Virus record (IMG/VR): IMGVR_UViG_3300011113_000805 | Coordinates: 62,001 to 126,000 of that record | Strand: one strand, 5' to 3' | Length of the DNA stretch: 64,000 nucleotides | In this document: piece after piece, positions 19,741 through 32,470 of the stretch | How the letters are laid out: each line of letters begins with the position of its first letter | Numbering within the stretch: the stretch's first letter is position 1 | Notes under the pieces: generated by a model | What the model saw: the letters and a program-made list of their open reading frames with translations, nothing else | Database searches by the model: none | What the model was told of the DNA's origin: nothing | Position numbers and translations under genes: made by a program

Positions 19741-20538
19741 TCACACCGCGCCGTAGTTGATGACCTCGAAGGAGGCACCGTTATCGAGGCACCACTGGGC
19801 CGTCGCCTGCCACTTCTCGTGATCTACCGATGTCGTGTGACCCTTCACTTCGTAGAGTGTCTTACCATCAAGTGTGAGGAAGTCTGGGATGTAGGTGCGC
19901 TCGACTCCCTTCGGATCGATGTAGGAAATGCGAATGTCGTGCTGCTTCGTGATGGGTAAGCCGGCGCTGATGCAAGAGTCCAGGAATCGTGTCTCCCAGG
20001 AAGAGTGCATATACTCCTCCCTGCCCGTGAATGGGTTGAGCTTCCACTCGGCCCTGTAGGGAGCTTGAGGACCGATCTTTCCCTGTTCGAGGAGGTCAAT
20101 GGCTCGATCTGTCTGGCGCTTTCTCTTCTCTGCCGACTCGGGCTTTTGCCAGTTTTCAGAGTTTGTCTTGGCTGATCGCTTTCTGACTTCGGGTGTTATA
20201 TGTGATCGCATTAATGCAGCTTGTGCTATAGTTTTTTCTTTATTTTCATTGTAATAGCGCTCTAAATTTTGACGATTTTTAGCACCGATCTTGGCCTTAG
20301 ATTCGGCAGTCAAACGACCTTTGATCCTTGCTGAGTGTCCGTGAATGTATCGAAGAAACCTCATACCTTGAGATTTAGAGAAAGGTGCATCTTGACCACA
20401 CCCACACTCACATTTTGGAGGGACACCTCCGTAAAAATGTTTCAATAGATAGCTCTCGTAAGAGAGGCCATGGCATCTGGACACGTGTGAGGCTAAACGC
20501 TCAAATGACTTAAAACAAAGTTTGCATGTAGTTTCCAT
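19741..20538 (-). CDS. Free-standing putative homing endonuclease: Zn-finger/NUMOD-like N-terminus plus TnsA-like PD-(D/E)xK nuclease
   Basis: CKLC...H...H and PPKCECGCG motifs, a basic linker, then YMHSSWETRF...YIPDF...LYEVKG. Confidence 0.7.
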   Translation of the reverse strand: METTCKLCFKSFERLASHVSRCHGLSYESYLLKHFYGGVPPKCECGCGQDAPFSKSQGMRFLRYIHGHSARIKGRLTAESKAKIGAKNRQNLERYYNENKEKTIAQAALMRSHITPEVRKRSAKTNSENWQKPESAEKRKRQTDRAIDLLEQGKIGPQAPYRAEWKLNPFTGREEYMHSSWETRFLDSCISAGLPITKQHDIRISYIDPKGVERTYIPDFLTLDGKTLYEVKGHTTSVDHEKWQATAQWCLDNGASFEVINYGAV

Positions 20539-20663: not shown

Positions 20664-22589
20664 CTATATTATGTTCATGTCGAGGCAAGTGACCGTGCCA
20701 TAGAAGTCGCTGCGAACCATCTTCTTGCCATAACGAGTCATGACACCCTTACGAGGGGTGAAATCCTCAGGAGCAAAGATGGTGGGAGTGACAATGAGTG
20801 GAACGTAGGGAGCATAGACATATCCGGTCTCCAGGTAGCTGCCGCCCTTGAAGCCGACGAGGATCTTGTTACGGGGGAAGTAAGGATCCTTGTAGACGGT
20901 GAAGCGGTTGCTAAGGGTTCCGATCTTCTCGGCACCAATTGTCATGGGGGTACCAACCTGGCCGCTGCCGTCGATGGAGTAGACGGGCTTGTAGAGCACC
21001 GAAGCCTCCAGGATGGTGGCGACGTCAGGGGAGACCACAATGAAGTTGGCGGAGCCGCGGAGGGTCTTGCGATGGATCTCGTTGGCAACATCGATAATGG
21101 TCTCGGAGAGGGTCTCGTACCACTCACGAACGGTGCCGGTGAAGGCAGGGCCAGGAGTGAGTGTAGATGCACGAGCAACTTCAGCACCAGTCTGCTTGTT
21201 AACAAACTTACCAGGAGCACGAGACCAGAAGAAGTTGGCACCGGTTCCGGTTGTCAACAGGTCATTGAGGATCTCACGGTCCAGCTCTAGAGCAATCTGC
21301 TCGGAGAGGATCTGGGTGAGCTCAACTTCTGCGTCAAGTGAGTGGTAGGCATTGAGGTCCTGGGCAAGCTCAGGTGACCAGCGAGCGCGAAGCTTACGAG
21401 TTGTGGCAACAACCGAGATGGACTCGATCTTGATGTCAATCTCAGGGATCGCAGGTGAAGGCGAAGTGCTGTTGAAATTGGACTCAAAGACTGGAATTGT
21501 CAGTGTTGAACCATCGTTGCCAACATCAAGTGTTGAAGCAATAGGATAGCTAACAAAGAAGTCACCAGGTGCTGTGCCTGCAAGCTTCGTTCCTGAAACA
21601 ATCATTAGCACTGCGGCATTTGTTCCGCTAACAGGTGTAAATCCATTAGCTGTGAAGGTGTTGGTGCCAGAGTCCCAAGTACCAAGCTGGTTGAGGCGGC
21701 GAACGTTAAGAACACCGGTACCACCTTGCACGGCCTGACCTACAGGAGCAACATCGGTGTCAGCATTTGCAGCTCCTGTGAGGAAGAGACCAAACTCCTT
21801 CACCATGGTGGAATCAACATTGCTCTGGAATCCCTTACCGGTGCCGGCATTACCAGCAAACTTTAGAACAACAGCGGTAAACTTACCGGCAGACTGATCA
21901 ATGAGGCTGCTGATTTGTGGGTCGAATTGGAGAAGACGACCATCGGAACCAGATGTTGAAAGAGTTCCTTGAACAAGAGTGGTTCCTGAGCCGTAGGATC
22001 CTGATGCAAGGAATGCGTCAGCGAGAACTGTTGAAATTGCAGATCCACTGTGCACCTTGGAGTAAGCAGTGCCAACGAGGTCGTACTGACCACCGACACC
22101 AAGAGATCCTGACTGAATTCCCTTGCCAGCGGGGTTGTTATAGATGGACTGCCCAACTGAGTACGTACCACGAGCGCCAACAGTTTCGCTACCATCAACA
22201 CCGGTGTTAGCGCCACGGTTATTACCAAAAGTGTAATCCAGGTAGAAAAGGAGACCTGATGGGAGGCTCATAGGCTGAATGGAAACGAGATCGTTGGCAA
22301 CAAGACCACCGAAGACCCTACGAACGATAGGGAATGCGATGTTGGTGAAGCCGCGGATGTCGCCAGAAGAGGAAGAGGTGCCGGCACCATTACCGATGGA
22401 GTTAGCCTCCTTCAGGATCTGGGCAGTCTGGTTCTCCAGGAGGCGAGCCATATTCTCCTTGCGGACACCGTCGAGACCCCTCAGGAGTCCAGTGCGGTTC
22501 CACTTCTCGAGGAGCCTACGTCCCTCGGTGCCAAGATGCCTCTCGCGAATGCCCTCGGCTAGTTGATCTAGTGTAAATGACTTCGACAT
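20664..22589 (-). CDS. Major capsid protein (T4 gp23-like)
   Basis: 641 aa: KWNRTGLL, AFPIVRRVF, VSIQPMSLPSGLLFYLDY, TRKLRARWSPELAQDLNAYHSLDAEVEL, YAPYVPL, GVMTRYG. Confidence 0.97.
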   Translation of the reverse strand: MSKSFTLDQLAEGIRERHLGTEGRRLLEKWNRTGLLRGLDGVRKENMARLLENQTAQILKEANSIGNGAGTSSSSGDIRGFTNIAFPIVRRVFGGLVANDLVSIQPMSLPSGLLFYLDYTFGNNRGANTGVDGSETVGARGTYSVGQSIYNNPAGKGIQSGSLGVGGQYDLVGTAYSKVHSGSAISTVLADAFLASGSYGSGTTLVQGTLSTSGSDGRLLQFDPQISSLIDQSAGKFTAVVLKFAGNAGTGKGFQSNVDSTMVKEFGLFLTGAANADTDVAPVGQAVQGGTGVLNVRRLNQLGTWDSGTNTFTANGFTPVSGTNAAVLMIVSGTKLAGTAPGDFFVSYPIASTLDVGNDGSTLTIPVFESNFNSTSPSPAIPEIDIKIESISVVATTRKLRARWSPELAQDLNAYHSLDAEVELTQILSEQIALELDREILNDLLTTGTGANFFWSRAPGKFVNKQTGAEVARASTLTPGPAFTGTVREWYETLSETIIDVANEIHRKTLRGSANFIVVSPDVATILEASVLYKPVYSIDGSGQVGTPMTIGAEKIGTLSNRFTVYKDPYFPRNKILVGFKGGSYLETGYVYAPYVPLIVTPTIFAPEDFTPRKGVMTRYGKKMVRSDFYGTVTCLDMNII

Positions 22590-25925: not shown

Positions 25926-26377
25926 CACCTTCTTGGGCTAATTTTCGAATTCGAGAAGGCAATTGTTGCCCAATTATCTGCGCCTTCAAAAAGGGTAGGA
26001 TCCACACCGGTATCAATGTATGGATTTGTATTCTCATTATTGGCAGCTGAACCGATTCTTTCAACTAATCCGCTAGACGCAGTATCTGCAAATATTTCAG
26101 CCATTATAGCGTTTCCACCGGTAAGTTCTCGATAACTCTCGGCTTTAACCCTAGTGGTCACAGGCTGTTGTGTCTTTGGAACCGAAGCCTTTCGTGAGAC
26201 ACCATTAGGATGAATCAAGTCCAGTGCCGGTCGAGAAATAGTATGCTGAGCCTCTACTGGTGCTCGGCTTCCAGATTTTCTTTCTCTAACACTTTCAACG
26301 ACATTTTTTGGAGATCCCTCAATTATGATCTCAAGAAGACACTCTTTTACCAAGGATTTTAGATCATCTCTTGTCAC
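25925..26377 (-). CDS. Hypothetical head-module protein (150 aa)
   Basis: Likely GTG start at 26377 (SD GGAGG), overlapping the protease stop. Confidence 0.65.
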   Translation of the reverse strand: MTRDDLKSLVKECLLEIIIEGSPKNVVESVRERKSGSRAPVEAQHTISRPALDLIHPNGVSRKASVPKTQQPVTTRVKAESYRELTGGNAIMAEIFADTASSGLVERIGSAANNENTNPYIDTGVDPTLFEGADNWATIAFSNSKISPRR

Positions 26378-28055
26378 TCTTCCTCCACGAAAGTACTTCG
26401 TTGAATACTCTATCAATTCTATCGCTTCGTGTGAAGGTCTTTTTTAGATCATTTTCAGAAACCCTCTTTCCCTCGGCCATCATAAATGCACCTGGTGTCG
26501 ACGGCTCTGCGACAAAGTCCCAGCAGATCAGCTGAAAATCGTCCTGCACAACCTGTGAGTCTCCATCACGTTTTGTAGAACCAACTCCACGTGATGAGAT
26601 TCCAAGTGTGACGCCGGACTCAACAAGGCTCTGAAGAATCTTGCCCATTGGGGTGTCCAAGATTTCCACAGTACCATAACAAACATTTCCTTCCAACCAG
26701 GCTTCACGAATAATGTGACTCACTTTTTTCAGTTCAACAACAGACGAGTCTGGGTGGTCACAGTTTCCTGTCCATACGACTCTTTCATTTTGCCTCATAA
26801 GCCATGTTCCGTTCTTGACATTAACGCAATACACAGGACCATCATATTCAATTTCATCAATTTTCATAAACCTTAGATCAGATGAAACTGCATTTGATGT
26901 ATGCATATACACAATATGCATATCAGATTGGTTTTCAGCTAGAATCACTCGTCCAGGATCAGGTGAAATTCTTTCATAGGGCTTTCTAACTCTAATTGTT
27001 GAAGCATGCCCTAGTTTAAGCATGACCTCTTGAACATCATTTGCCAATCGTCTTGATGAGGTTGCATATTCAATTGCACCATTTTTCCTATGAAGACCAT
27101 CACCATACAGCATCCATTCTAACAATATTGATAAAAGCCTTGGAGACCAATTTTTTGCATAATCAGGAATGAACTTTTCTCGAGATCCGCCTAACTGAAC
27201 TAAATGTGAGTGAAGTTCTGAATTTCTAATACAGAAATCAAATCTCTTCTCTAAAGACTCCTTAGTTGTAAAATTCCATGGAAGCTGCTGCATAAGATTC
27301 ATAATCTTGTTTGCAGTTTCACCTGAATTTTGTGTGATTACAACATTATGATATGCCTGCCTATATGACTTATACACACCACTTGAATGACCTTCAGCCA
27401 AGTATATTCCTAAAAAGGCTGCCCAAAGTTGTGAATCGATTTCCTTACCATCAATCAAAAATGTTTCAGGATCTTCACCCTTCCAGTTTGTGAATGCTCG
27501 CTTAAATGCACTATGACTTATCCATGATCTTTTAGTTTTATTTGTGCCTCTGGCAATATCAAGCAGTTCAGTAGATGAAATTTTGTATGGAATATTTTTT
27601 CTGTCCCAAAGAACATGATTGTGACTTGGTGTTACAACCATGTTATAGGTCGAGTGATTGTGAATTTTGTGTAACTTTCCTGAAAATTGAATTTCAATTT
27701 TTTGATCAATTGCCTGATATTCAGTTTCACCGGTACTCAAATTACAAGTTGCAATAATCTCATTATCATCGATGTTTTCTATCTTTTTCCATCCTGAAAG
27801 AGTAAGAATCTCTGTGCCAGGCGGAACACACTCTCCTAAGGCCCTATTTTCTCTAATGAACTTTTGATAGTTTCTAACTTCTCTCTCAAGAATACTAAGT
27901 GGATAGACACGACCATTCTGATTGAGAGTCTCAGCCTTCTGGAGGATTCCTTTCATGATAACTTTTCCACCGTTTCTATCACGGCTTTCCTTAACCATTT
28001 CAGGTGTATATGAAAATGCCGTCCATTCGGTAAGAAGCTTTTTGTCACTTGACAT
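26364..28055 (-). CDS. Prohead maturation protease (T4 gp21-like) containing an intein
   Basis: Start MSSDKKLL. Exteins: GILQKAETLNQNGRVYP, ALGE|CDHP, GISSRGVGS, WDFVAEPSTPGA. The spliced product is 207 aa. Confidence 0.93.
   Translation of the reverse strand: MSSDKKLLTEWTAFSYTPEMVKESRDRNGGKVIMKGILQKAETLNQNGRVYPLSILEREVRNYQKFIRENRALGECVPPGTEILTLSGWKKIENIDDNEIIATCNLSTGETEYQAIDQKIEIQFSGKLHKIHNHSTYNMVVTPSHNHVLWDRKNIPYKISSTELLDIARGTNKTKRSWISHSAFKRAFTNWKGEDPETFLIDGKEIDSQLWAAFLGIYLAEGHSSGVYKSYRQAYHNVVITQNSGETANKIMNLMQQLPWNFTTKESLEKRFDFCIRNSELHSHLVQLGGSREKFIPDYAKNWSPRLLSILLEWMLYGDGLHRKNGAIEYATSSRRLANDVQEVMLKLGHASTIRVRKPYERISPDPGRVILAENQSDMHIVYMHTSNAVSSDLRFMKIDEIEYDGPVYCVNVKNGTWLMRQNERVVWTGNCDHPDSSVVELKKVSHIIREAWLEGNVCYGTVEILDTPMGKILQSLVESGVTLGISSRGVGSTKRDGDSQVVQDDFQLICWDFVAEPSTPGAFMMAEGKRVSENDLKKTFTRSDRIDRVFNEVLSWRKSDKR
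26763..27830 (-). mobile_element. Intein (356 aa) with LAGLIDADG-type homing endonuclease
   Basis: Starts CVPPGTEILT; block B VTPSH; endonuclease blocks FLGIYLAEG and WMLYGDG; block F VYCVNV; ends WTGN with Cys at +1. It is AT-richer than the exteins. Confidence 0.92.
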
Positions 28056-28890
28056 CTTTTTCCTCCACTTCAGCAATAAGTTTAATCAATGTAAGGTAAC
28101 GGGAGAGGTCACCTTCTTGAATTTTTTCTTCTGGTAACTGTTCAATTTCACGCTTGACAGGATCAACCTTTTCAGTGATGACCTTGTCTCCTCTTTCACT
28201 TCGAAGAACCTGCATTGCCTTTACGGCCCGTTCCTTGATAGACTTGCATGACTCTACAAGCTGTCCTGTTTCACCTCGGGTAGCAGCCTTGACATATGTG
28301 TTTATCAATGAAATCTGTTCAGGATTCAGTGTGTTAGAATACTTTCTCTCAAGCTTCTCCTGCATTAGCTTCAATGAGAGCGAAGTGACCTCAGGTTTCT
28401 TGATAATAGGTGATGCCACTTCCTTGTGTGTCAAATACTCGACAACGCGGGACTCATGAAGGGCAGTCTCAGGTGTTGTGACACCTGTTGTTGATCTCCA
28501 TGTGTTTAGAAGTGTTTGTACGGTAGCAAGTTTCCTGTAGTTAGGAATTCTCATATCGAAAAAACCTGGAAAATCCAGCTTCTTATTGATGCTTTTGATT
28601 AGCAGGCTCTTCTCGTTATCAAGCCGCCTTGCATCATGTCCTATTGCCGCTGTTTTAGCCTCATCGAGGATTCTAATTGCAAGTGGCTCACTTCCTACAT
28701 GCGTCTGTACTAGTGCATTAAAGAGTCGAAACTCCTTATAAAGCTCTGTCCCAGGCTTGAAGTGATCATTCATGATTCCCATGGCGATCTCAGCCCTGTC
28801 CGATCTTCCCTCAAGAATACACTTAGAGGTATATCGGATAAGCTGCTCATAGATCAGACCGACATTCCTTTTCTTATTGTGACTACTCAT
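28045..28890 (-). CDS. Hypothetical protein between portal and protease
   Basis: Likely start MSSHNKKRN at 28890, overlapping the portal stop; helical. Confidence 0.75.
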   Translation of the reverse strand: MSSHNKKRNVGLIYEQLIRYTSKCILEGRSDRAEIAMGIMNDHFKPGTELYKEFRLFNALVQTHVGSEPLAIRILDEAKTAAIGHDARRLDNEKSLLIKSINKKLDFPGFFDMRIPNYRKLATVQTLLNTWRSTTGVTTPETALHESRVVEYLTHKEVASPIIKKPEVTSLSLKLMQEKLERKYSNTLNPEQISLINTYVKAATRGETGQLVESCKSIKERAVKAMQVLRSERGDKVITEKVDPVKREIEQLPEEKIQEGDLSRYLTLIKLIAEVEEKDVK

Positions 28891-30847
28891 CGTCGGACTC
28901 TCCATCAAGGTTTATATCGAGCTTCTCGCGAAGTATTGACTTTTCAGTCTTCACTGTATTTATGCTCTTGCTGAGAAGACTTAGGACAGATTTCATCTCA
29001 GGTGTATTTTTAGGTGTTGGTGACTCACCAAACATTGCTCTTGACAGAGAAAGATCATTTTCCCAGATCTCCCTGTTCATTCTTGACCTACCATATGGGT
29101 CATTAGAAGTCGATTGTTTATGACTGTCTGTTGTCATTACTAGAAAGTCAGGTACCTCTGCCTTCGCGTTTGAAGAACGTGATGGTTTCTTTCTCCTCTT
29201 GCCTCCAAAGACATTCTTTGACTCGGAAGAAGGCTTAATCGGGAAATCATCGACCTCACCAAGAATGGGGCCGGCCTTAAAGTCACCTGAGAAGAGATCT
29301 TCTTCACCGCCGGTATTGGATTCTCCTGCATCATCACCACCGGCCGGAGGTGTCGGCTCATCACCGGCGCCGCCGGCGCCTCCAAATAAGTCTTCACCGC
29401 CTCCTCCGCCTCCTCCAGCTCCGGCACCTCCGCCACCATCAGGTGATTCGGCGGTTGCAGCTGCCTCAACTTCAGCGTCCTCCTTCTTGTCTACCTTACG
29501 ACCTTCCTTTATGGACTCAATCTCTTCATCGGTAAGACCAAGAATGTTCTTTCGAATCCACTTTCTATCGACAGCACCCTCAGGTGCAGAACCTGCAATG
29601 TCGAACTTTGTCTTGATGAGCTCAAGTTTTTGCAACTGTGCCACAGAAGATGGATTGTTTAAGCTAAGGTGAAAGTTGAGAAGATCATCGTCAGTAAAAC
29701 CGTGCGAGTAAAGATGGATCATTGCCATCTTGTTAAGCTCTGAGATGATAACTTTCTGAATGCGGGTTATTGTTCTAGAGAACCTGATGTCCTCTTGTGC
29801 CAGAGTCGCCTTTGCCCCAATCTCCTCATCATATCCAAGATATGCTTTAGGAATCTTTAAGGCAGCAAAGAGCTTCTTTTGAATATACTGCACATCCTCT
29901 ACAGCTGCAGCATTCTGTCCACCGGCAAGTGTCTCAATTTTTGTTCCTGATTCACCACCACGAACAGGAATAAAATAGTCATCATCAACAGCAAGAGGAT
30001 TATACCTGAGATCGAGTCTCCCCGTATTCTGGTCAATGGCTTTGTTCCTCTTCAGGCTTGTCTGGGCTTGCTGCATGTAAGTTTCAATGTCCTCAGGCGG
30101 AACATTTCCAACATCGATATAGAAAATTCTACGCTCCGGTGCCCTAACGATACGATAGACAAGCATTGCATCTTCAATTAGGATAAGCTGACGCCAGATT
30201 CGCCTTGCTGACTCAAGAACAGAAGCACCGTATGGAAGGAATGCATCATTTCCAAGAAGTCGGAAATGAGTTACCTGCCAATTCTCAAGGACCGTGTTTC
30301 CTCTTGTGATCCAACGAAAGCGAACCGCCATTGGATCCTTAGGATCATATCCTTCTTCCCGCTCAATTTCTGCAATGGGAATAGGATAAGCATTTAGAAC
30401 GCCATACTTTGGATCCACATCATTAAAAAGAAAGAAATCACCATACTTGCAGAGATTTCGAACCCACATTGGTAAGTTAAAATTAACATTGAGAATATCA
30501 TCGAAGAGATTCGTCAATAGTTCCAAAATTGCTCTGTTCTCAGAATAGACATGCAAGACCCTTCCTGAGTCATCCTGTGATGCAGTTTCCTCAGCATAAA
30601 TGTCAAGTGCAGATGCAATTTCTGGTGTTGCCTCCATCTCCGAGAAGTCAGAGTACCTTGACATTCTGTCATATGCACCGTATGCCGAAACTGTGCTTGC
30701 ATAAACATCCGAGACATTTCTACGAAAAAGCTCATATGCAGAAGATGCAGTCGGTGTTGATTCGCCCTTTACTTTTCTCCTTACGACAGGACCACTCCTA
30801 AAGAGCTTCGTCAATCGTGAGAAAAGATTTCCCTGTGGTTTTGCCAA
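28883..30847 (-). CDS. Portal protein (T4 gp20-like)
   Basis: TTG start with SD AAGGAG. Motifs: EIASALDIYAEE, RNLCKYGDFF, EDAMLVYRIVRAPERRIFYIDVGN, DYFIPVRG, IETLAGG, LFAALKIP. Confidence 0.96.
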   Translation of the reverse strand: MAKPQGNLFSRLTKLFRSGPVVRRKVKGESTPTASSAYELFRRNVSDVYASTVSAYGAYDRMSRYSDFSEMEATPEIASALDIYAEETASQDDSGRVLHVYSENRAILELLTNLFDDILNVNFNLPMWVRNLCKYGDFFLFNDVDPKYGVLNAYPIPIAEIEREEGYDPKDPMAVRFRWITRGNTVLENWQVTHFRLLGNDAFLPYGASVLESARRIWRQLILIEDAMLVYRIVRAPERRIFYIDVGNVPPEDIETYMQQAQTSLKRNKAIDQNTGRLDLRYNPLAVDDDYFIPVRGGESGTKIETLAGGQNAAAVEDVQYIQKKLFAALKIPKAYLGYDEEIGAKATLAQEDIRFSRTITRIQKVIISELNKMAMIHLYSHGFTDDDLLNFHLSLNNPSSVAQLQKLELIKTKFDIAGSAPEGAVDRKWIRKNILGLTDEEIESIKEGRKVDKKEDAEVEAAATAESPDGGGGAGAGGGGGGGEDLFGGAGGAGDEPTPPAGGDDAGESNTGGEEDLFSGDFKAGPILGEVDDFPIKPSSESKNVFGGKRRKKPSRSSNAKAEVPDFLVMTTDSHKQSTSNDPYGRSRMNREIWENDLSLSRAMFGESPTPKNTPEMKSVLSLLSKSINTVKTEKSILREKLDINLDGESDDE

Positions 30848-30886: not shown

Positions 30887-32470
30887 CTACTTGTAAAGCC
30901 AGGCAATATTTGCCGGTACCGGTGAAGAACCTATTGGACCTTCATCCATTGTTTGAGGATCATATGGACGAGGTGAAAAGGGATTTCCTACAATAAGAGG
31001 TGGAGGCCTCTGGGTTGTTGGTCGATTAATGCCAAAACCTGCTAGCATTGCCTTATAAACACCTGAATTATTCTTTTTGCTTTCACTAAGTGTTGGATCA
31101 TAGAGTGATGTTCCAATAGCCAGCGCAAGGACAAGGTCATCATTAAATCCCTTTTGTGCCCTAGGGCTATCACCAAACCAGACGAAAGTTTTAAGCTCAT
31201 CCAAGAGTCTCGATGAATAGACCTTAATTGCTCCGGTCCTCAAGTGCTCCTCAAGCCTTGTGAGAATAGCTGATCGACTTGGTCCTGATGTTGCAAATCC
31301 AAACTTAGAAGAAGGTATCTCTGTGGAGTACTGAAACCTCCTGTCATTCATGTAGATGTTAGGATAACCAATGTCTCTCAGCTTAATGATGGTTGCGATT
31401 CCGTATGTGTTGTTTTCAGGGCAAATCATGGCCTTGTTATATCGATAGCCGGCCTCACTAAGGAGGACACCGAATTGATCAGGCGGTAATTTTCCTCGAA
31501 ACTCACAGACTTGTTCAGAGTCATTAGTGTCTATAACATGGAATGTTGAGTAATCTTTTCCATCACCTCGTGAAACGTCACCAGATATGATGTATTTGTG
31601 ATCAGGTAATGGGTATTTCCAGACCCAAACACCCGACTCAGGTCCCCATCTTTCTATTGGTGAACGTGTTGCAACCCTAATTCTCTCAAAATCCTCAGCA
31701 TTGAGGAATGTATCACCTGAAGAGGCAAAGTCGCACATAAGCTCCTGTGCGACTTGCTTTCGAGTCATTTGCCTAGACTCTTTTTCGAACCAGGCCTGGT
31801 CCCTCTCTGGATGCACATCCCACATGAGTTTGATGGGATTAAAGTCAGAGATACCAGTCTCGGCATCAACCCAAAGTTTGTGGTACTGGTTTCCGACACC
31901 ATTTGGTGTGCTGAGAATGATGGCTCCACCACCGGTAGATAGGGTAGGATAGAGACCCTTCCAGAGCTCCTCAAAGTTTCGAATGAATGCAGCCTCATCA
32001 ATAATAAGAAGAGATAGTGCTTCAGATCGACCGGCATCCTCAGATGTTGGTACGGCCTTGATTATTGAGCCATTCGAAAATTCTATTGAAGTTCGAGTTT
32101 CAGATGTTACCTTTGGAATAAGCAGCCAAGGTGGCAAATTCGCTAGCATTGTTTTCACTTTGCGTACGAAGTTAGTTGCCGTTGCCATCTTGGTAGCAAT
32201 GATTAGAATGTTCTTTTCTTTGTAGAATATCGCACGCCAAAGTGCAAATGCAGCTGTGACCGTGGAAAGCCCTAGCTGCCTGCTCTTAAGAACAATATTA
32301 AAGCGATGTTTTACAAATTCTTTAACACAATCATTCTGGAATGGGTAAGTCTTAAAACTGATAAGGCCTCTATTAGGATGCGTAATTTTTGCCCATTTGT
32401 TGATAAAATGGACAGGATCTTTACCGCACTTTATAACCTCTTCCGTTTGACTATTTTTAGATACCGGCAT
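30887..32470 (-). CDS. terL: Terminase large subunit (T4 gp17-like)
   Basis: Walker A LKSRQLGLST, Walker B LLIIDEAAF, coupling motif STPNG, nuclease motifs SGDVSRGDGKDYS and NDDLV. Confidence 0.96.
   Translation of the reverse strand: MPVSKNSQTEEVIKCGKDPVHFINKWAKITHPNRGLISFKTYPFQNDCVKEFVKHRFNIVLKSRQLGLSTVTAAFALWRAIFYKEKNILIIATKMATATNFVRKVKTMLANLPPWLLIPKVTSETRTSIEFSNGSIIKAVPTSEDAGRSEALSLLIIDEAAFIRNFEELWKGLYPTLSTGGGAIILSTPNGVGNQYHKLWVDAETGISDFNPIKLMWDVHPERDQAWFEKESRQMTRKQVAQELMCDFASSGDTFLNAEDFERIRVATRSPIERWGPESGVWVWKYPLPDHKYIISGDVSRGDGKDYSTFHVIDTNDSEQVCEFRGKLPPDQFGVLLSEAGYRYNKAMICPENNTYGIATIIKLRDIGYPNIYMNDRRFQYSTEIPSSKFGFATSGPSRSAILTRLEEHLRTGAIKVYSSRLLDELKTFVWFGDSPRAQKGFNDDLVLALAIGTSLYDPTLSESKKNNSGVYKAMLAGFGINRPTTQRPPPLIVGNPFSPRPYDPQTMDEGPIGSSPVPANIAWLYK

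What the first reader, a model, noticed from the sequence alone, without database searches (positions are those of the whole stretch)
26763..27830. Endonuclease-bearing intein two residues before the catalytic His of the prohead protease
Seen: ALGE|C...WTGN|CDHP, 356 aa, with GC 19-22/60 in sampled lines versus 31/60 in the C-extein. The intein ends in GN rather than the canonical HN. Established: the GE(L/C)xHP His is catalytic in gp21-type proteases, so capsid maturation should depend on splicing, and the +1 Cys is the required nucleophile. Inteins are more familiar in phage replication enzymes and terminases. Inference: a recent invader, and a possible conditional (redox/metal) switch on head maturation.
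Basis: partly seen in the sequence, partly recalled or inferred. Interest (0 to 1): 0.6.

Follow-up and report, generated by a model that had tools for sequence, protein, structure and literature searches.

The report
Homing intein splitting a phage head protease
A self-splicing, mobile protein insert (an intein with its own homing endonuclease) sits two residues before the catalytic histidine of a freshwater T4-like phage's head-maturation protease; it is real and probably active, but it is one of hundreds of uncatalogued copies at this spot, not a one-off.

Summary
Window 26763-27830 (- strand) encodes a 356-aa insert, ALGE|C...WTGN|CDHP, inside a 563-aa Peptidase_S77 (T4 gp21-type) prohead protease. 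Its GC is 36.0%, the 0.5th percentile of the 257-kb genome.

It is a genuine intein with a LAGLIDADG endonuclease:
- The AF2 model (pLDDT 85.5) matches TliVMA, PI-SceI and PI-PfuI at Foldseek E of 5e-16 to 1e-11.
- Natural intein-free alleles are 207 aa (563 minus 356), 98% identical to the C-extein, and read GECDHP. Their DNA matches the window's flanks at 47 of 48 bases.

It is not rare. At least 394 metagenomic cluster representatives hit the precursor. Almost all of the 120 listed carry this intein family in the same motif, at four offsets. Two carry two inteins five residues apart. Ending in GN is normal for the family.

All 120 copies keep Cys1, Thr B:7, His B:10 and Asn G:7, plus an invariant Cys at block F:4; 119 keep Thr at G:5. 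This mixes class 1 and class 3 signatures.

A relative 92-94% identical in DNA has lost the endonuclease through a clean 555-nt deletion, so the homing cycle is ongoing. Nothing supports a redox or metal switch.

Verdict: a new member of a known kind, of moderate interest.

The parts
26364..28055 (-). Precursor gene: T4 gp21-like (Peptidase_S77) prohead protease interrupted by an intein. It is 563 aa from the ATG at 28055; an in-frame TTG at 28076 would give 570 aa. The stop codon is 26364-26366.
   Evidence: P0003 is 563 aa and 99% identical.
27831..28055 (-). N-extein, 75 aa, ending ...RENRALGE.
   Evidence: It aligns to T4 gp21 (5jbl) residues 57-101.
26763..27830 (-). Intein, 356 aa: a HINT splicing domain with a nested LAGLIDADG homing endonuclease.
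   Evidence: The boundaries are confirmed by natural 207-aa empty-site alleles.
27828..27830 (-). Block A, Cys1, the N-terminal nucleophile. Invariant in 120 of 120 family members.
27621..27632 (-). Block B, T-P-S-H (Thr B:7 and His B:10). Both are invariant in 120 of 120. B:12 is His here; elsewhere in the family it is V, I, M, L or F, never Trp.
   Evidence: Aligned to the AceL NrdHF S65/H68/M70 block.
26916..27470 (-). Endonuclease domain (intein aa 121-305). This is exactly the 555 nt missing from mini-intein alleles of close relatives.
   Evidence: L017 alignment. The joint 26915->27471 is seen in an independent lake metagenome.
27390..27416 (-). LAGLIDADG motif 1 (FLGIYLAEG). The acidic residue E146 is kept in 106 of the 108 family inteins that retain the endonuclease domain.
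27096..27125 (-). LAGLIDADG motif 2 (LLEWMLYGDG). The acidic residue D244 is kept in 107 of 108. The conserved Lys219 (window 27174-27176) is kept in 108 of 108.
26796..26834 (-). Block F (VYCVNVKNGTWLM). Position F:4 is Cys, invariant in 120 of 120, where class 1 inteins usually have Asp. The F:13-equivalent position is Thr; in the family it is T or N, never His.
   Evidence: (aligned with the PI-PkoII VYDLSV block).
26763..26780 (-). Block G (VVWTGN). Thr G:5 is kept in 119 of 120. Gly G:6 is variable (G, H, S, R, C or M). Asn G:7 is kept in 120 of 120.
26367..26762 (-). C-extein, 132 aa, starting with Cys+1 (26760-26762) in CDHPDSSVV. The catalytic His codon is 26754-26756 and the catalytic Ser codon (first Ser of SSRG) is 26595-26597.
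   Evidence: The 5jbl chain has Ala at both positions.
28883..30847 (-). Portal protein gene (context: head module).
   Evidence: PHROG 213, 6.6e-75.
30887..32470 (-). Terminase large subunit gene (context).
   Evidence: PHROG 2, 4e-49.
20664..22589 (-). Major head protein gene (context), the presumed substrate of the protease.
   Evidence: PHROG 138, 8.7e-71.

Best explanation
The feature is a functional, mobile intein. It combines a HINT splicing domain with a nested LAGLIDADG homing endonuclease. It sits in the catalytic-histidine motif (GE^CDHP) of the T4 gp21-type prohead protease of an uncultured freshwater T4-like phage.

Proposed working, with the basis of each step:
- The 563-aa precursor is translated whole. 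The gene is one open frame (shown).
- The intein excises itself and ligates the 75-aa and 132-aa exteins into a 207-aa protease reading ...ALGE-CDHPDSS... This is inferred from conserved catalytic residues and from natural alleles with exactly that sequence.
- Only then can the His/Ser active site and the prohead-core protein form, so head maturation depends on splicing (inferred).
- The chemistry is most likely the four-step class 1 route: a Cys1 thioester, transfer to Cys+1, Asn356 cyclisation, then an S-to-N shift. The invariant block-F Cys and block-G Thr replace the usual Asp and His helpers.
- At the DNA level, the endonuclease cuts intein-free GECDHP alleles during co-infection, and the intein is copied in by repair. 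This homing is inferred from presence/absence polymorphism and conserved endonuclease residues.
- The family persists through a cycle of gain, endonuclease decay and loss.
For: Identity and fold:
- Pfam Peptidase_S77 is split in two by the insert, with LAGLIDADG_3 inside it.
- The family profile hits solved inteins: 6zgq at 1.4e-6, PI-PkoII at 1.5e-6 and the Mja KlbA intein at 2e-4.
- The AF2 model has pLDDT 85.5, with mostly 90 or higher across the intein.
- Foldseek top hits are endonuclease-bearing inteins TliVMA, PhoVMA, PI-SceI and PI-PfuI (E of 5e-16 to 1e-11), then I-DmoI, then T4 gp21.

Splicing competence:
- Cys1, Thr B:7, His B:10, Cys F:4 and Asn G:7 are invariant in 120 of 120 family inteins. 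Thr G:5 is kept in 119 of 120. The +1 residue is always Cys, Ser or Thr.

Exact boundaries:
- Intein-free proteases of 207 aa (563 minus 356), 98% identical to the C-extein, read ...ALGECDHPDSS....
- Their DNA across the empty site is 47 of 48 nt identical to the window's two flanks, although the genomes are only 84-86% identical.

Endonuclease and mobility:
- E146 is kept in 106, K219 in 108 and D244 in 107 of the 108 family inteins that retain the endonuclease domain.
- Intein and extein identities are decoupled. One pair has exteins 77% identical but inteins 38%; another has 66% and 55%.
- The intein's GC is at the 0.5th percentile of the genome.
- A relative 92-94% identical in DNA has a clean 555-nt in-frame deletion of the endonuclease. 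The same joint occurs in an independent lake metagenome.
- The full allele is present in another study's aquatic metagenome.

Precedent:
- A phage intein with a penultimate Gly splices efficiently (PMC5050341).
Against: - No experiment shows splicing, endonuclease activity or dependence of head maturation on splicing. All of this is sequence inference.
- Pfam Intein_splicing and TIGR01445 score below their cut-offs on the single sequence. phmmer against the PDB finds nothing. The intein is therefore divergent.
- Both histidines that usually assist Asn cyclisation (F:13 and G:6) are absent from this copy.
- The invariant Cys at F:4 and Thr at G:5 are class 3 signatures. The class 1 route is therefore not certain.
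- The four runs laid showed no joint that skips the whole intein, so there is no direct evidence of both alleles co-existing in one sample.
Confidence: 0.85

Rival explanations
1. It is the same intein, but it splices by a class 3-type route. The invariant block-F Cys (C335) attacks the N-terminal junction and forms the first branched thioester. Thr G:5 and His B:10 act as its triad. Cys1 is dispensable or plays a secondary role, such as regulation or a redundant nucleophile.
For: - Cys F:4 is kept in 120 of 120 and Thr G:5 in 119 of 120 family members. These are two of the three residues of the class 3 WCT signature (PMC2807308, PMC7891396).
- This copy has no His at F:13 or G:6, and F:13 is never His in the family. 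That matches the proven class 3 AceL NrdHF intein, which has an 'MCT' triplet.
- That intein (6zgq) is the best solved-structure intein hit of the family profile, at 1.4e-6.
- Three inteins with a WCT triplet were noted to begin with Ser or Cys (PMC2807308).
Against: - Cys1 is invariant in 120 of 120, and so is Thr B:7, the 'spring-loading' residue of class 1 that class 3 inteins generally lack (PMC6195587).
- B:12 is never Trp.
- The +1 residue at this site is Cys, whereas class 3 inteins almost always use Ser or Thr.
- Some relatives in other host proteins carry Asp, Asn or Ser at F:4 and still end in GN.
Confidence: 0.2
2. The intein is a conditional switch. Its three active-site cysteines (Cys1, Cys F:4, Cys+1) form disulfides or bind zinc. 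Protease maturation, and so head assembly, would then be delayed under oxidative or metal stress.
For: Support is by analogy only. The class 3 Msm DnaBi1 intein is reversibly trapped by a disulfide through its F:4 Cys (PMC6195587). In the site-A copies of this family, three Cys cluster at the active site.
Against: - No data bear on it.
- Site-B copies of the same intein family use Ser+1 and work in the same motif. A Cys+1 partner is therefore not a family requirement.
- The abundance of intein-free alleles and of mini-inteins argues for a selfish element rather than a retained regulator.
- The intein is absent from phages whose protease is 98% identical.
Confidence: 0.1
3. It is a decaying or dead insertion. 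The intein no longer splices, and the gene is a pseudogene or the protease function is supplied otherwise.
For: - The penultimate His and the F:13 His are missing.
- Single-sequence HMM scores fall below the curated cut-offs.
Against: - The frame is open across 563 codons.
- Every catalytic position is conserved in 119-120 of 120 family members, and so are the endonuclease residues.
- gp21 is essential and single-copy. The only match to the intein family in the 257-kb record is this gene.
- The same allele recurs in independent studies.
Confidence: 0.04

Closest known systems
Endonuclease-bearing class 1 inteins (PI-SceI / Sce VMA, TliVMA, PhoVMA, PI-PfuI, PI-PkoII)
   Same: - The overall architecture is the same: a HINT domain split by a two-motif LAGLIDADG endonuclease. 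Foldseek gives E of 5e-16 to 1e-11.
- It has Cys1, a TxxH block B, a terminal Asn and a Cys+1.
- It inserts into a catalytic motif of an essential enzyme.
   Different: - Sequence identity is only 9-14%.
- Block F:4 is Cys, not Asp.
- There is no His at F:13 or G:6.
- The host is a phage structural-module protease rather than an ATPase, polymerase or RNR.
Class 3 inteins, especially the AceL NrdHF split intein (PDB 6zgq) and the MP-Be / Msm DnaB inteins
   Same: - It has Cys at F:4 and Thr at G:5.
- Both assisting histidines are absent from this copy, as in AceL NrdHF.
- AceL NrdHF is the best sequence-profile intein hit among solved structures, at 1.4e-6.
- It has phage and metagenome origin.
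   Different: - It retains Cys1 and Thr B:7, both invariant.
- It has no Trp at B:12.
- It uses Cys+1 at this site.
- It is contiguous and carries an endonuclease.
Mycobacteriophage class 1 inteins lacking the penultimate His (for example the Bethlehem gp51 RDF intein; Kelley et al. 2016, PMC5050341)
   Same: - It is a phage intein ending in Gly-Asn with Cys1.
- The penultimate position varies within the family (G, H, S or K).
- It carries an endonuclease and is mobile.
   Different: - The host proteins there are terminases, methylases, portal, RDF and similar. No prohead protease is listed.
- There is no detectable close sequence relationship.
Chlamydomonas eugametos chloroplast ClpP intein (Wang & Liu 1997, cited in PMC5050341; details from memory)
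   Same: It is an intein interrupting a serine protease, with a non-His penultimate residue.
   Different: - It is an unrelated protease fold (ClpP against the assemblin-like S77 fold).
- It comes from a eukaryotic organelle.
- It was not compared by sequence here.
T4 gp21 prohead core protease (PDB 5jbl, MEROPS S77)
   Same: The exteins align to gp21 on both sides of the insert, at 8.6e-22. The GE-x-(D/N)-H-P and SSRG motifs are conserved. The gene lies in the same module of TerL, portal, protease, scaffold-like ORFs and MCP.
   Different: - T4 and all cultured cyanophage homologues seen are uninterrupted and read GEL(N/D)HP.
- This clade reads GECDHP.

Membership tests
Intein (HINT splicing domain) | In-frame insert within a conserved host protein, whose homologues exist without the insert and are colinear across the site. 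| tested here: met
   Intein-free alleles of 207 aa, 98% identical to the C-extein, read ALGECDHPDSS. Their DNA matches the flanks at 47 of 48 nt. Mel-JY01 and T4 gp21 are uninterrupted.
Intein (HINT splicing domain) | Blocks A, B, F and G are present, with an N-terminal Cys/Ser, TxxH, a C-terminal Asn and a +1 Cys/Ser/Thr. | tested here: met
   C1, T67-x-x-H70, N356 and C+1 are present. They are invariant in 120 family members. The penultimate His is absent, which is variable in the family.
Intein (HINT splicing domain) | HINT fold. | tested here: met
   The AF2 model has pLDDT 85.5. Foldseek matches PI-SceI, TliVMA and PI-PfuI at E of 5e-16 to 1e-11. The profile hits 6zgq, 2cw7 and 2jmz. Curated single-sequence HMMs fall below their cut-offs (PF14890 at 17.8 against 35.8 bits; TIGR01445 at 19.1 against 24.5 bits).
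Intein (HINT splicing domain) | Autocatalytic protein splicing. | not testable with these tools
   This needs expression and mass spectrometry.
Class 1 intein | N-terminal Cys/Ser/Thr nucleophile with Thr B:7 and His B:10. | tested here: met
   Kept in 120 of 120.
Class 1 intein | Typical helpers: Asp at F:4, and His at F:13 and/or G:6. | tested here: not met
   F:4 is Cys, F:13 is Thr and G:6 is Gly. These helpers are frequent but not obligatory. [quoted passage not shown]
Class 3 intein | WCT triplet: Trp B:12, Cys F:4, Thr G:5. | tested here: inconclusive
   The Cys and Thr are met (120 of 120 and 119 of 120). B:12 is His here and V, I, M, L or F in the family, never Trp. The proven class 3 AceL NrdHF intein also lacks the Trp, having Met instead.
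Class 3 intein | No N-terminal nucleophile, and usually no Thr at B:7. | tested here: not met
   Cys1 and Thr B:7 are invariant. Definitions are taken from PMC2807308 and PMC6195587.
Class 3 intein | Block-F branched intermediate; the F:4 Cys is obligatory. | not testable with these tools
   This needs mutagenesis of C1 and C335.
LAGLIDADG homing endonuclease (two-motif, intein-nested) | Two LAGLIDADG helices, each ending in an acidic residue, with the αββαββα fold. | tested here: met
   PF14528 at 3e-9. The motifs are FLGIYLAEG and LLEWMLYGDG. E146, D244 and K219 are conserved in 106-108 of 108. Foldseek matches I-DmoI at E of about 1e-5 to 1e-6.
LAGLIDADG homing endonuclease (two-motif, intein-nested) | Site-specific cleavage of the intein-less allele. 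| not testable with these tools
   Indirect evidence only: presence/absence polymorphism and a near-identical empty site.
Peptidase S77 (T4 gp21 prohead protease) | Sequence membership, with the catalytic His and Ser motifs. | tested here: met
   PF03420 at 75.4 bits against a cut-off of 27. PHROG 207 at 2e-47. 5jbl at 8.6e-22; the aligned His and Ser positions are those reading Ala in the crystal chain.
Peptidase S77 (T4 gp21 prohead protease) | Located in the head-morphogenesis module. | tested here: met
   The order is TerL, portal, a 287-aa ORF, the protease, small ORFs and MCP.

The most novel reading that the evidence does not exclude
This intein represents a large, undescribed intein lineage. 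Its signature is Cys1 ... TxxH ... Cys(F:4) ... [S/T/C]-Gly-Asn|[S/T/C]. There are 6950 representative hits, including proteins with up to about 9 copies.

The lineage could be mechanistically intermediate between class 1 and class 3. It might use the block-F Cys as an obligatory or alternative branch point while still keeping Cys1.

In prohead proteases it has repeatedly hopped between insertion points 5-7 residues apart inside one catalytic motif. It sometimes leaves two inteins separated by a 5-residue 'micro-extein' (CDHPD) that contains the catalytic His.
Probability: 0.25. Interest if true: 0.65.

Novelty: new member of a known kind. Interest (0 to 1): 0.4.

Why it matters
- It adds a capsid-maturation protease, a structural-module enzyme, to the list of intein hosts. 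In phages that list is dominated by terminases and nucleic-acid enzymes. The insert lies exactly at the catalytic His.
- The site is a natural experiment in intein population biology. It offers hundreds of copies, empty GECDHP alleles, endonuclease-deleted derivatives, four neighbouring insertion offsets and double-intein alleles.
- The invariant pairing of Cys1 and Cys F:4, with no assisting histidines in this copy, makes the family a convenient test case. It could show how class 3 splicing might have arisen from class 1 inteins in phages.
- For annotation, gp21 homologues of about 560 aa in metagenomes and in two GenBank phage genomes should be read as intein-containing proteases.

Tried and rejected
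Searches that gave little or nothing:
- phmmer of the single intein against PDB sequences gave no hit at E up to 1. The family profile was needed.
- Single-sequence PF14890 and TIGR01445 scores were below their cut-offs.
- Literature searches for an intein in a prohead or maturation protease or in gp21 found no report. The hits concerned inteins in other genes of the same genomes.
- Tori & Perler 2011 (J Bacteriol) could not be read. What I say about class 3 inteins that begin with Ser or Cys rests on PMC2807308 and PMC3196547 only.

Ideas considered and rejected:
- Two inteins in P0024 (869 aa). It is a fusion or run-on with the upstream 287-aa gene.
- The site A/B difference as an alignment artefact. 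P0057 and P0130 have both sites occupied at once.
- The same intein family elsewhere in this genome. The only other inteins, in the RNR large subunit, are of a different type.

Reads and structure:
- The four runs laid showed no joint that skips the whole intein. All runs were contigs, so absence means little. The RNA library cannot prove transcription.

Operators' rule on joined sequences:
- I did not build or search a joined (spliced) extein sequence. The exteins were searched apart by reference, and natural intein-free alleles served as the comparison.
Full report
OBSERVATION

The ORF at window 26364..28076 (- strand) reads ...RENRALGE|CVPPGTEILT...NERVVWTGN|CDHPDSSVVELKKVSH.... The insert is residues 83-438 of the TTG-started frame. 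The probable start is the ATG at 28055, giving 563 aa. This matches the 99%-identical database protein P0003.

GC is 0.360 in the insert, 0.398 in the N-extein, 0.459 in the C-extein and 0.447 in the window. The insert lies at the 0.5th percentile of all 1068-nt windows of the 257-kb virus record that holds the window.

WHAT THE HOST GENE IS

Pfam finds Peptidase_S77 (prohead core serine protease) at 5.5e-21, in two stretches that flank the insert. PHROG 207, 'head maturation protease', scores 2e-47.

The intein-free homologue from Microcystis phage Mel-JY01 (AMGELDHPESSVVNLK) and the family profile both align to the T4 gp21 crystal chain 5jbl. In that chain the positions matching the window's His (DHP) and the first Ser of SSRG read Ala (GELNAP, GVASRG). 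This fits an inactivated catalytic double mutant. From memory these residues are His85 and Ser140 of gp21.

The splice junction therefore lies two residues before the catalytic His, with His at +3. The gene sits in a head module: TerL (30887-32470), portal (28883-30847), a 287-aa ORF, the protease, small ORFs and the major head protein (20664-22589), all on the - strand. The phage is a T4-like virus of fresh waters. Its nearest isolates are cyanophages, and the runs that hold it are aquatic, lake, river and reservoir metagenomes.

WHAT THE INSERT IS

Sequence evidence:
- Pfam LAGLIDADG_3 scores 3e-9 inside the insert.
- Single-sequence intein HMMs fall below their cut-offs, and phmmer against the PDB is blank.
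- A profile of 56 homologues hits solved inteins: AceL NrdHF 6zgq at 1.4e-6, PI-PkoII at 1.5e-6 and the Mja KlbA intein at 2e-4. It also hits I-DmoI weakly (E 0.03-0.2).

Structural evidence:
- An AF2 model of the precursor has mean pLDDT 85.5, with values mostly 90 or higher across the intein and low confidence only at the two junctions.
- Its best Foldseek matches are endonuclease-bearing inteins TliVMA, PhoVMA, PI-SceI and PI-PfuI, at E of 5e-16 to 1e-11. I-DmoI follows, then T4 gp21.

The blocks map as follows:

| Element | Residues |
|---|---|
| Block A | Cys1 |
| Block B | T67-P-S-H70 |
| LAGLIDADG motif 1 | FLGIYLAEG |
| LAGLIDADG motif 2 | LLEWMLYGDG |
| Block F | VYCVNVKNGTWLM |
| Block G | VVWTGN |

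BOUNDARIES AND MOBILITY

I searched the C-extein alone, by reference. This returned 7195 S77 proteins of 73-231 aa. The best are 207 aa, which is 563 minus 356. They are 98% identical to the C-extein and read ...NRALGECDHPDSSVVE...; 115 of the top 120 read GECDHP.

These natural empty-site alleles have exactly the sequence predicted for the ligated exteins. I did not build a joined sequence myself. The exteins were handled apart.

At the DNA level, the empty site in L011-L013 is AGA GAA AAT AGG GCC TTA GGA GAG|TGT GAC CAC CCA GAC TCG TCT GTC. It matches the window's two flanks at 47 of 48 bases, although the genomes are only 84-86% identical. The 60 nt next to the junction match at 59/60 and 57/60, against about 51/60 further away. 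This fits a conserved homing site, a short co-conversion tract, or both.

A relative 92-94% identical in DNA (L017, protein P0005, 378 aa) carries the same intein with a clean in-frame 555-nt deletion. The deleted stretch is window 26916-27470, which encodes intein aa 121-305, the endonuclease domain. The same joint, 26915 to 27471, appears in a contig of an independent lake metagenome. The full-length allele appears in another study's aquatic metagenome.

Intein and extein identities to the window are decoupled. One pair has exteins 77% identical but inteins 38%; another has 66% and 55%.

Together these results show an element that is gained, loses its endonuclease and is lost. This is the classical homing cycle. 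'Recent invader' is thus only part of the story.

HOW COMMON IT IS

The full precursor finds 394 cluster representatives of 313-997 aa. Almost all of the 120 listed are S77 plus intein. In 50,697 GenBank phage records, only an uncultured 484-kb phage (LR756508) and Desulfovibrio phage 7757/SRB7757 have it, and it is unannotated there. I found no paper that describes an intein in a prohead protease. Kelley et al. list terminases, methylases, portal, RDF and others, but no protease.

The family occupies four offsets in one motif:

| Site | Junction | Copies among those parsed |
|---|---|---|
| A | GE^...N^CDHP (the window) | 88 of 118 |
| B0 | GELDHP^ | 1 |
| B1 | GELDHPx^...GN^SSVV | 16 |
| B2 | GELDHPxx^...GN^SV | 13 |

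P0057 and P0130 have sites A and B1 occupied at the same time. The two inteins are separated only by CDHPD, and the full-length and mini inteins are arranged in opposite orders in the two proteins.

In trees rooted on relatives from other host proteins, the S77 inteins form one clade (support 100). Site-B inteins are nested among site-A inteins, and the window's site-A clade is nested among B2 inteins. An AU test rejects a single clade of all B inteins at p = 0.012. The grouping was chosen after seeing a first tree, so this is indicative only. It suggests the insertion point has changed more than once.

CATALYTIC SIGNATURE

Across 120 family inteins:

| Position | Residue | Conservation |
|---|---|---|
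| A:1 | Cys | 120/120 |
| B:7 | Thr | 120/120 |
| B:10 | His | 120/120 |
| B:12 | V, I, M, H, L or F | never Trp |
| F:4 | Cys | 120/120 |
| F:13 equivalent | Thr or Asn | never His |
| G:5 | Thr | 119/120 |
| G:6 | G 63, H 45, S 7, others | variable |
| G:7 | Asn | 120/120 |

The endonuclease residues E146, K219 and D244 are kept in 106-108 of the 108 family inteins that retain the endonuclease domain.

The GN ending is therefore a family trait. In relatives from other host proteins G:6 is Gly in 182 and His in 6. It also has functional precedent. The Bethlehem gp51 intein, which has a penultimate Gly, splices well, and changing that Gly to His slows it (PMC5050341).

Cys at F:4 and Thr at G:5 are two-thirds of the class 3 'WCT' signature (PMC2807308). 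The proven class 3 AceL NrdHF intein likewise has no Trp and lacks both histidines (PMC7891396). It is also the family's best solved-structure intein hit.

Against a class 3 route, Cys1 and the class 1 'spring-loading' Thr B:7 are invariant. Class 3 inteins generally lack both (PMC6195587). [quoted passage not shown]

I therefore favour a class 1 route helped by Cys F:4 and Thr G:5, at about 0.6-0.65. A class 3-like or dual route is a live rival, at about 0.2.

WIDER FAMILY

phmmer of the intein against 1.84 billion representatives gives 6950 hits at E of 1e-3 or better, and 244 at 1e-30 or better. Full-length relatives at 27-35% identity lie in PurD/GARS, a Mu-type portal, a glycosyltransferase and very large proteins with several copies, up to about nine in a 3308-aa protein. 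Most share the pattern C1...TxxH...C(F:4)...[S/T/C]-G-N|[S/T/C].

In the window's own 257-kb record, this is the only copy of the family. The RNR large subunit gene outside the window holds one or more inteins of a different type.

- Dependence of head maturation on splicing is a sound inference, because the active-site motif is split. It is untested.
- The +1 Cys is needed for splicing, but it is also the native residue of the intein-free alleles of this clade. More distant S77 proteases have Leu at this position. Whether the Cys pre-dated the intein or is the scar of earlier occupancy cannot be told from these data.
- The redox/metal switch has no support beyond analogy with Msm DnaBi1. Site-B copies with Ser+1 and the abundance of empty alleles argue for a selfish element.

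VERDICT

This is a real and very probably active homing intein. It is a new insertion allele, apparently undescribed in the literature I could search. It belongs to a well-known kind of element and is abundant in metagenomes. Interest is moderate at 0.4. That interest comes mainly from three family-level features: neighbouring insertion sites, tandem inteins around a 5-residue extein, and a mixed class 1/class 3 signature.

Noticed in passing
Proteins P0057 (763 aa) and P0130 (770 aa), from metagenomes, not in the window: These prohead proteases carry two inteins of this family only five residues apart: GE|intein|CDHPD|intein|SAV(V/I)SL. The 5-residue 'micro-extein' contains the catalytic His. 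In P0057 the first intein is full-length (349 aa) and the second is a mini-intein (160 aa). In P0130 the order is reversed (159 aa, then 393 aa).
   Followed up: partly
Proteins P0021, P0026, P0061 and others; L001:3001-4725 (LR756508); L002:2920-4671 (Desulfovibrio phage SRB7757): The same intein family sits at three further offsets, after DHP, DHPx and DHPxx, with Ser+1. Trees nest these among site-A inteins and nest the window's clade among B2 copies, which suggests repeated switching of the insertion point.
   Followed up: partly
L017:2146-3282 (Logan contig), and a joint at window 26915->27471 in run X8: A relative 92-94% identical in DNA carries a mini-intein made by a clean 555-nt in-frame deletion of the endonuclease domain. 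The identical joint occurs in an independent lake metagenome.
   Followed up: yes
Proteins P0208 (3308 aa), P0196, P0158, P0136 and others: Very large metagenomic proteins hold many copies or fragments of related inteins, up to about 9 in one protein. These share the pattern C1...TxxH...C(F:4)...[STC]-G-N. Other hosts are PurD/GARS (P0124), a Mu-type portal (P0125) and a glycosyltransferase (P0132). The organisms are unknown.
   Followed up: partly
G000:C1:48622-51189 (- strand), outside the window (L005:160-2727:-): The same phage genome has an 856-aa open frame for the ribonucleotide reductase large subunit. It is interrupted by one or more inteins of a different type (PF14890 at 2.6e-25, PT-HINT). 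A further weak HINT match lies at C1:28902-29024.
   Followed up: partly
window 20664-22589 (-): The major head protein ORF is 641 aa, but the PHROG 'major head protein' match covers only about residues 367-623. The long N-terminal part is unexplained.
   Followed up: no
window 19741-20538 (-): A 265-aa ORF next to the capsid gene matches phage endonuclease families (PHROG 15427, 1.9e-14). It may be a free-standing homing endonuclease in the head module.
   Followed up: no
window 29200-29600: A GC-rich stretch (up to 62%) lies inside the portal gene and encodes a Gly/Ala/Pro/Asp-rich low-complexity segment (...GGGGAGAGGGGGGGEDLFGGAGGAGDEPTPPAGG...).
   Followed up: no
L014-L016 (empty-site alleles): Some intein-free GECDHP alleles differ from the window's flanks at several synonymous positions within the putative homing site (for example CGT GAA AAT AGA GCA ... 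TGT GAT CAT CCG GAT AGC). They could be endonuclease-resistant variants.
   Followed up: no
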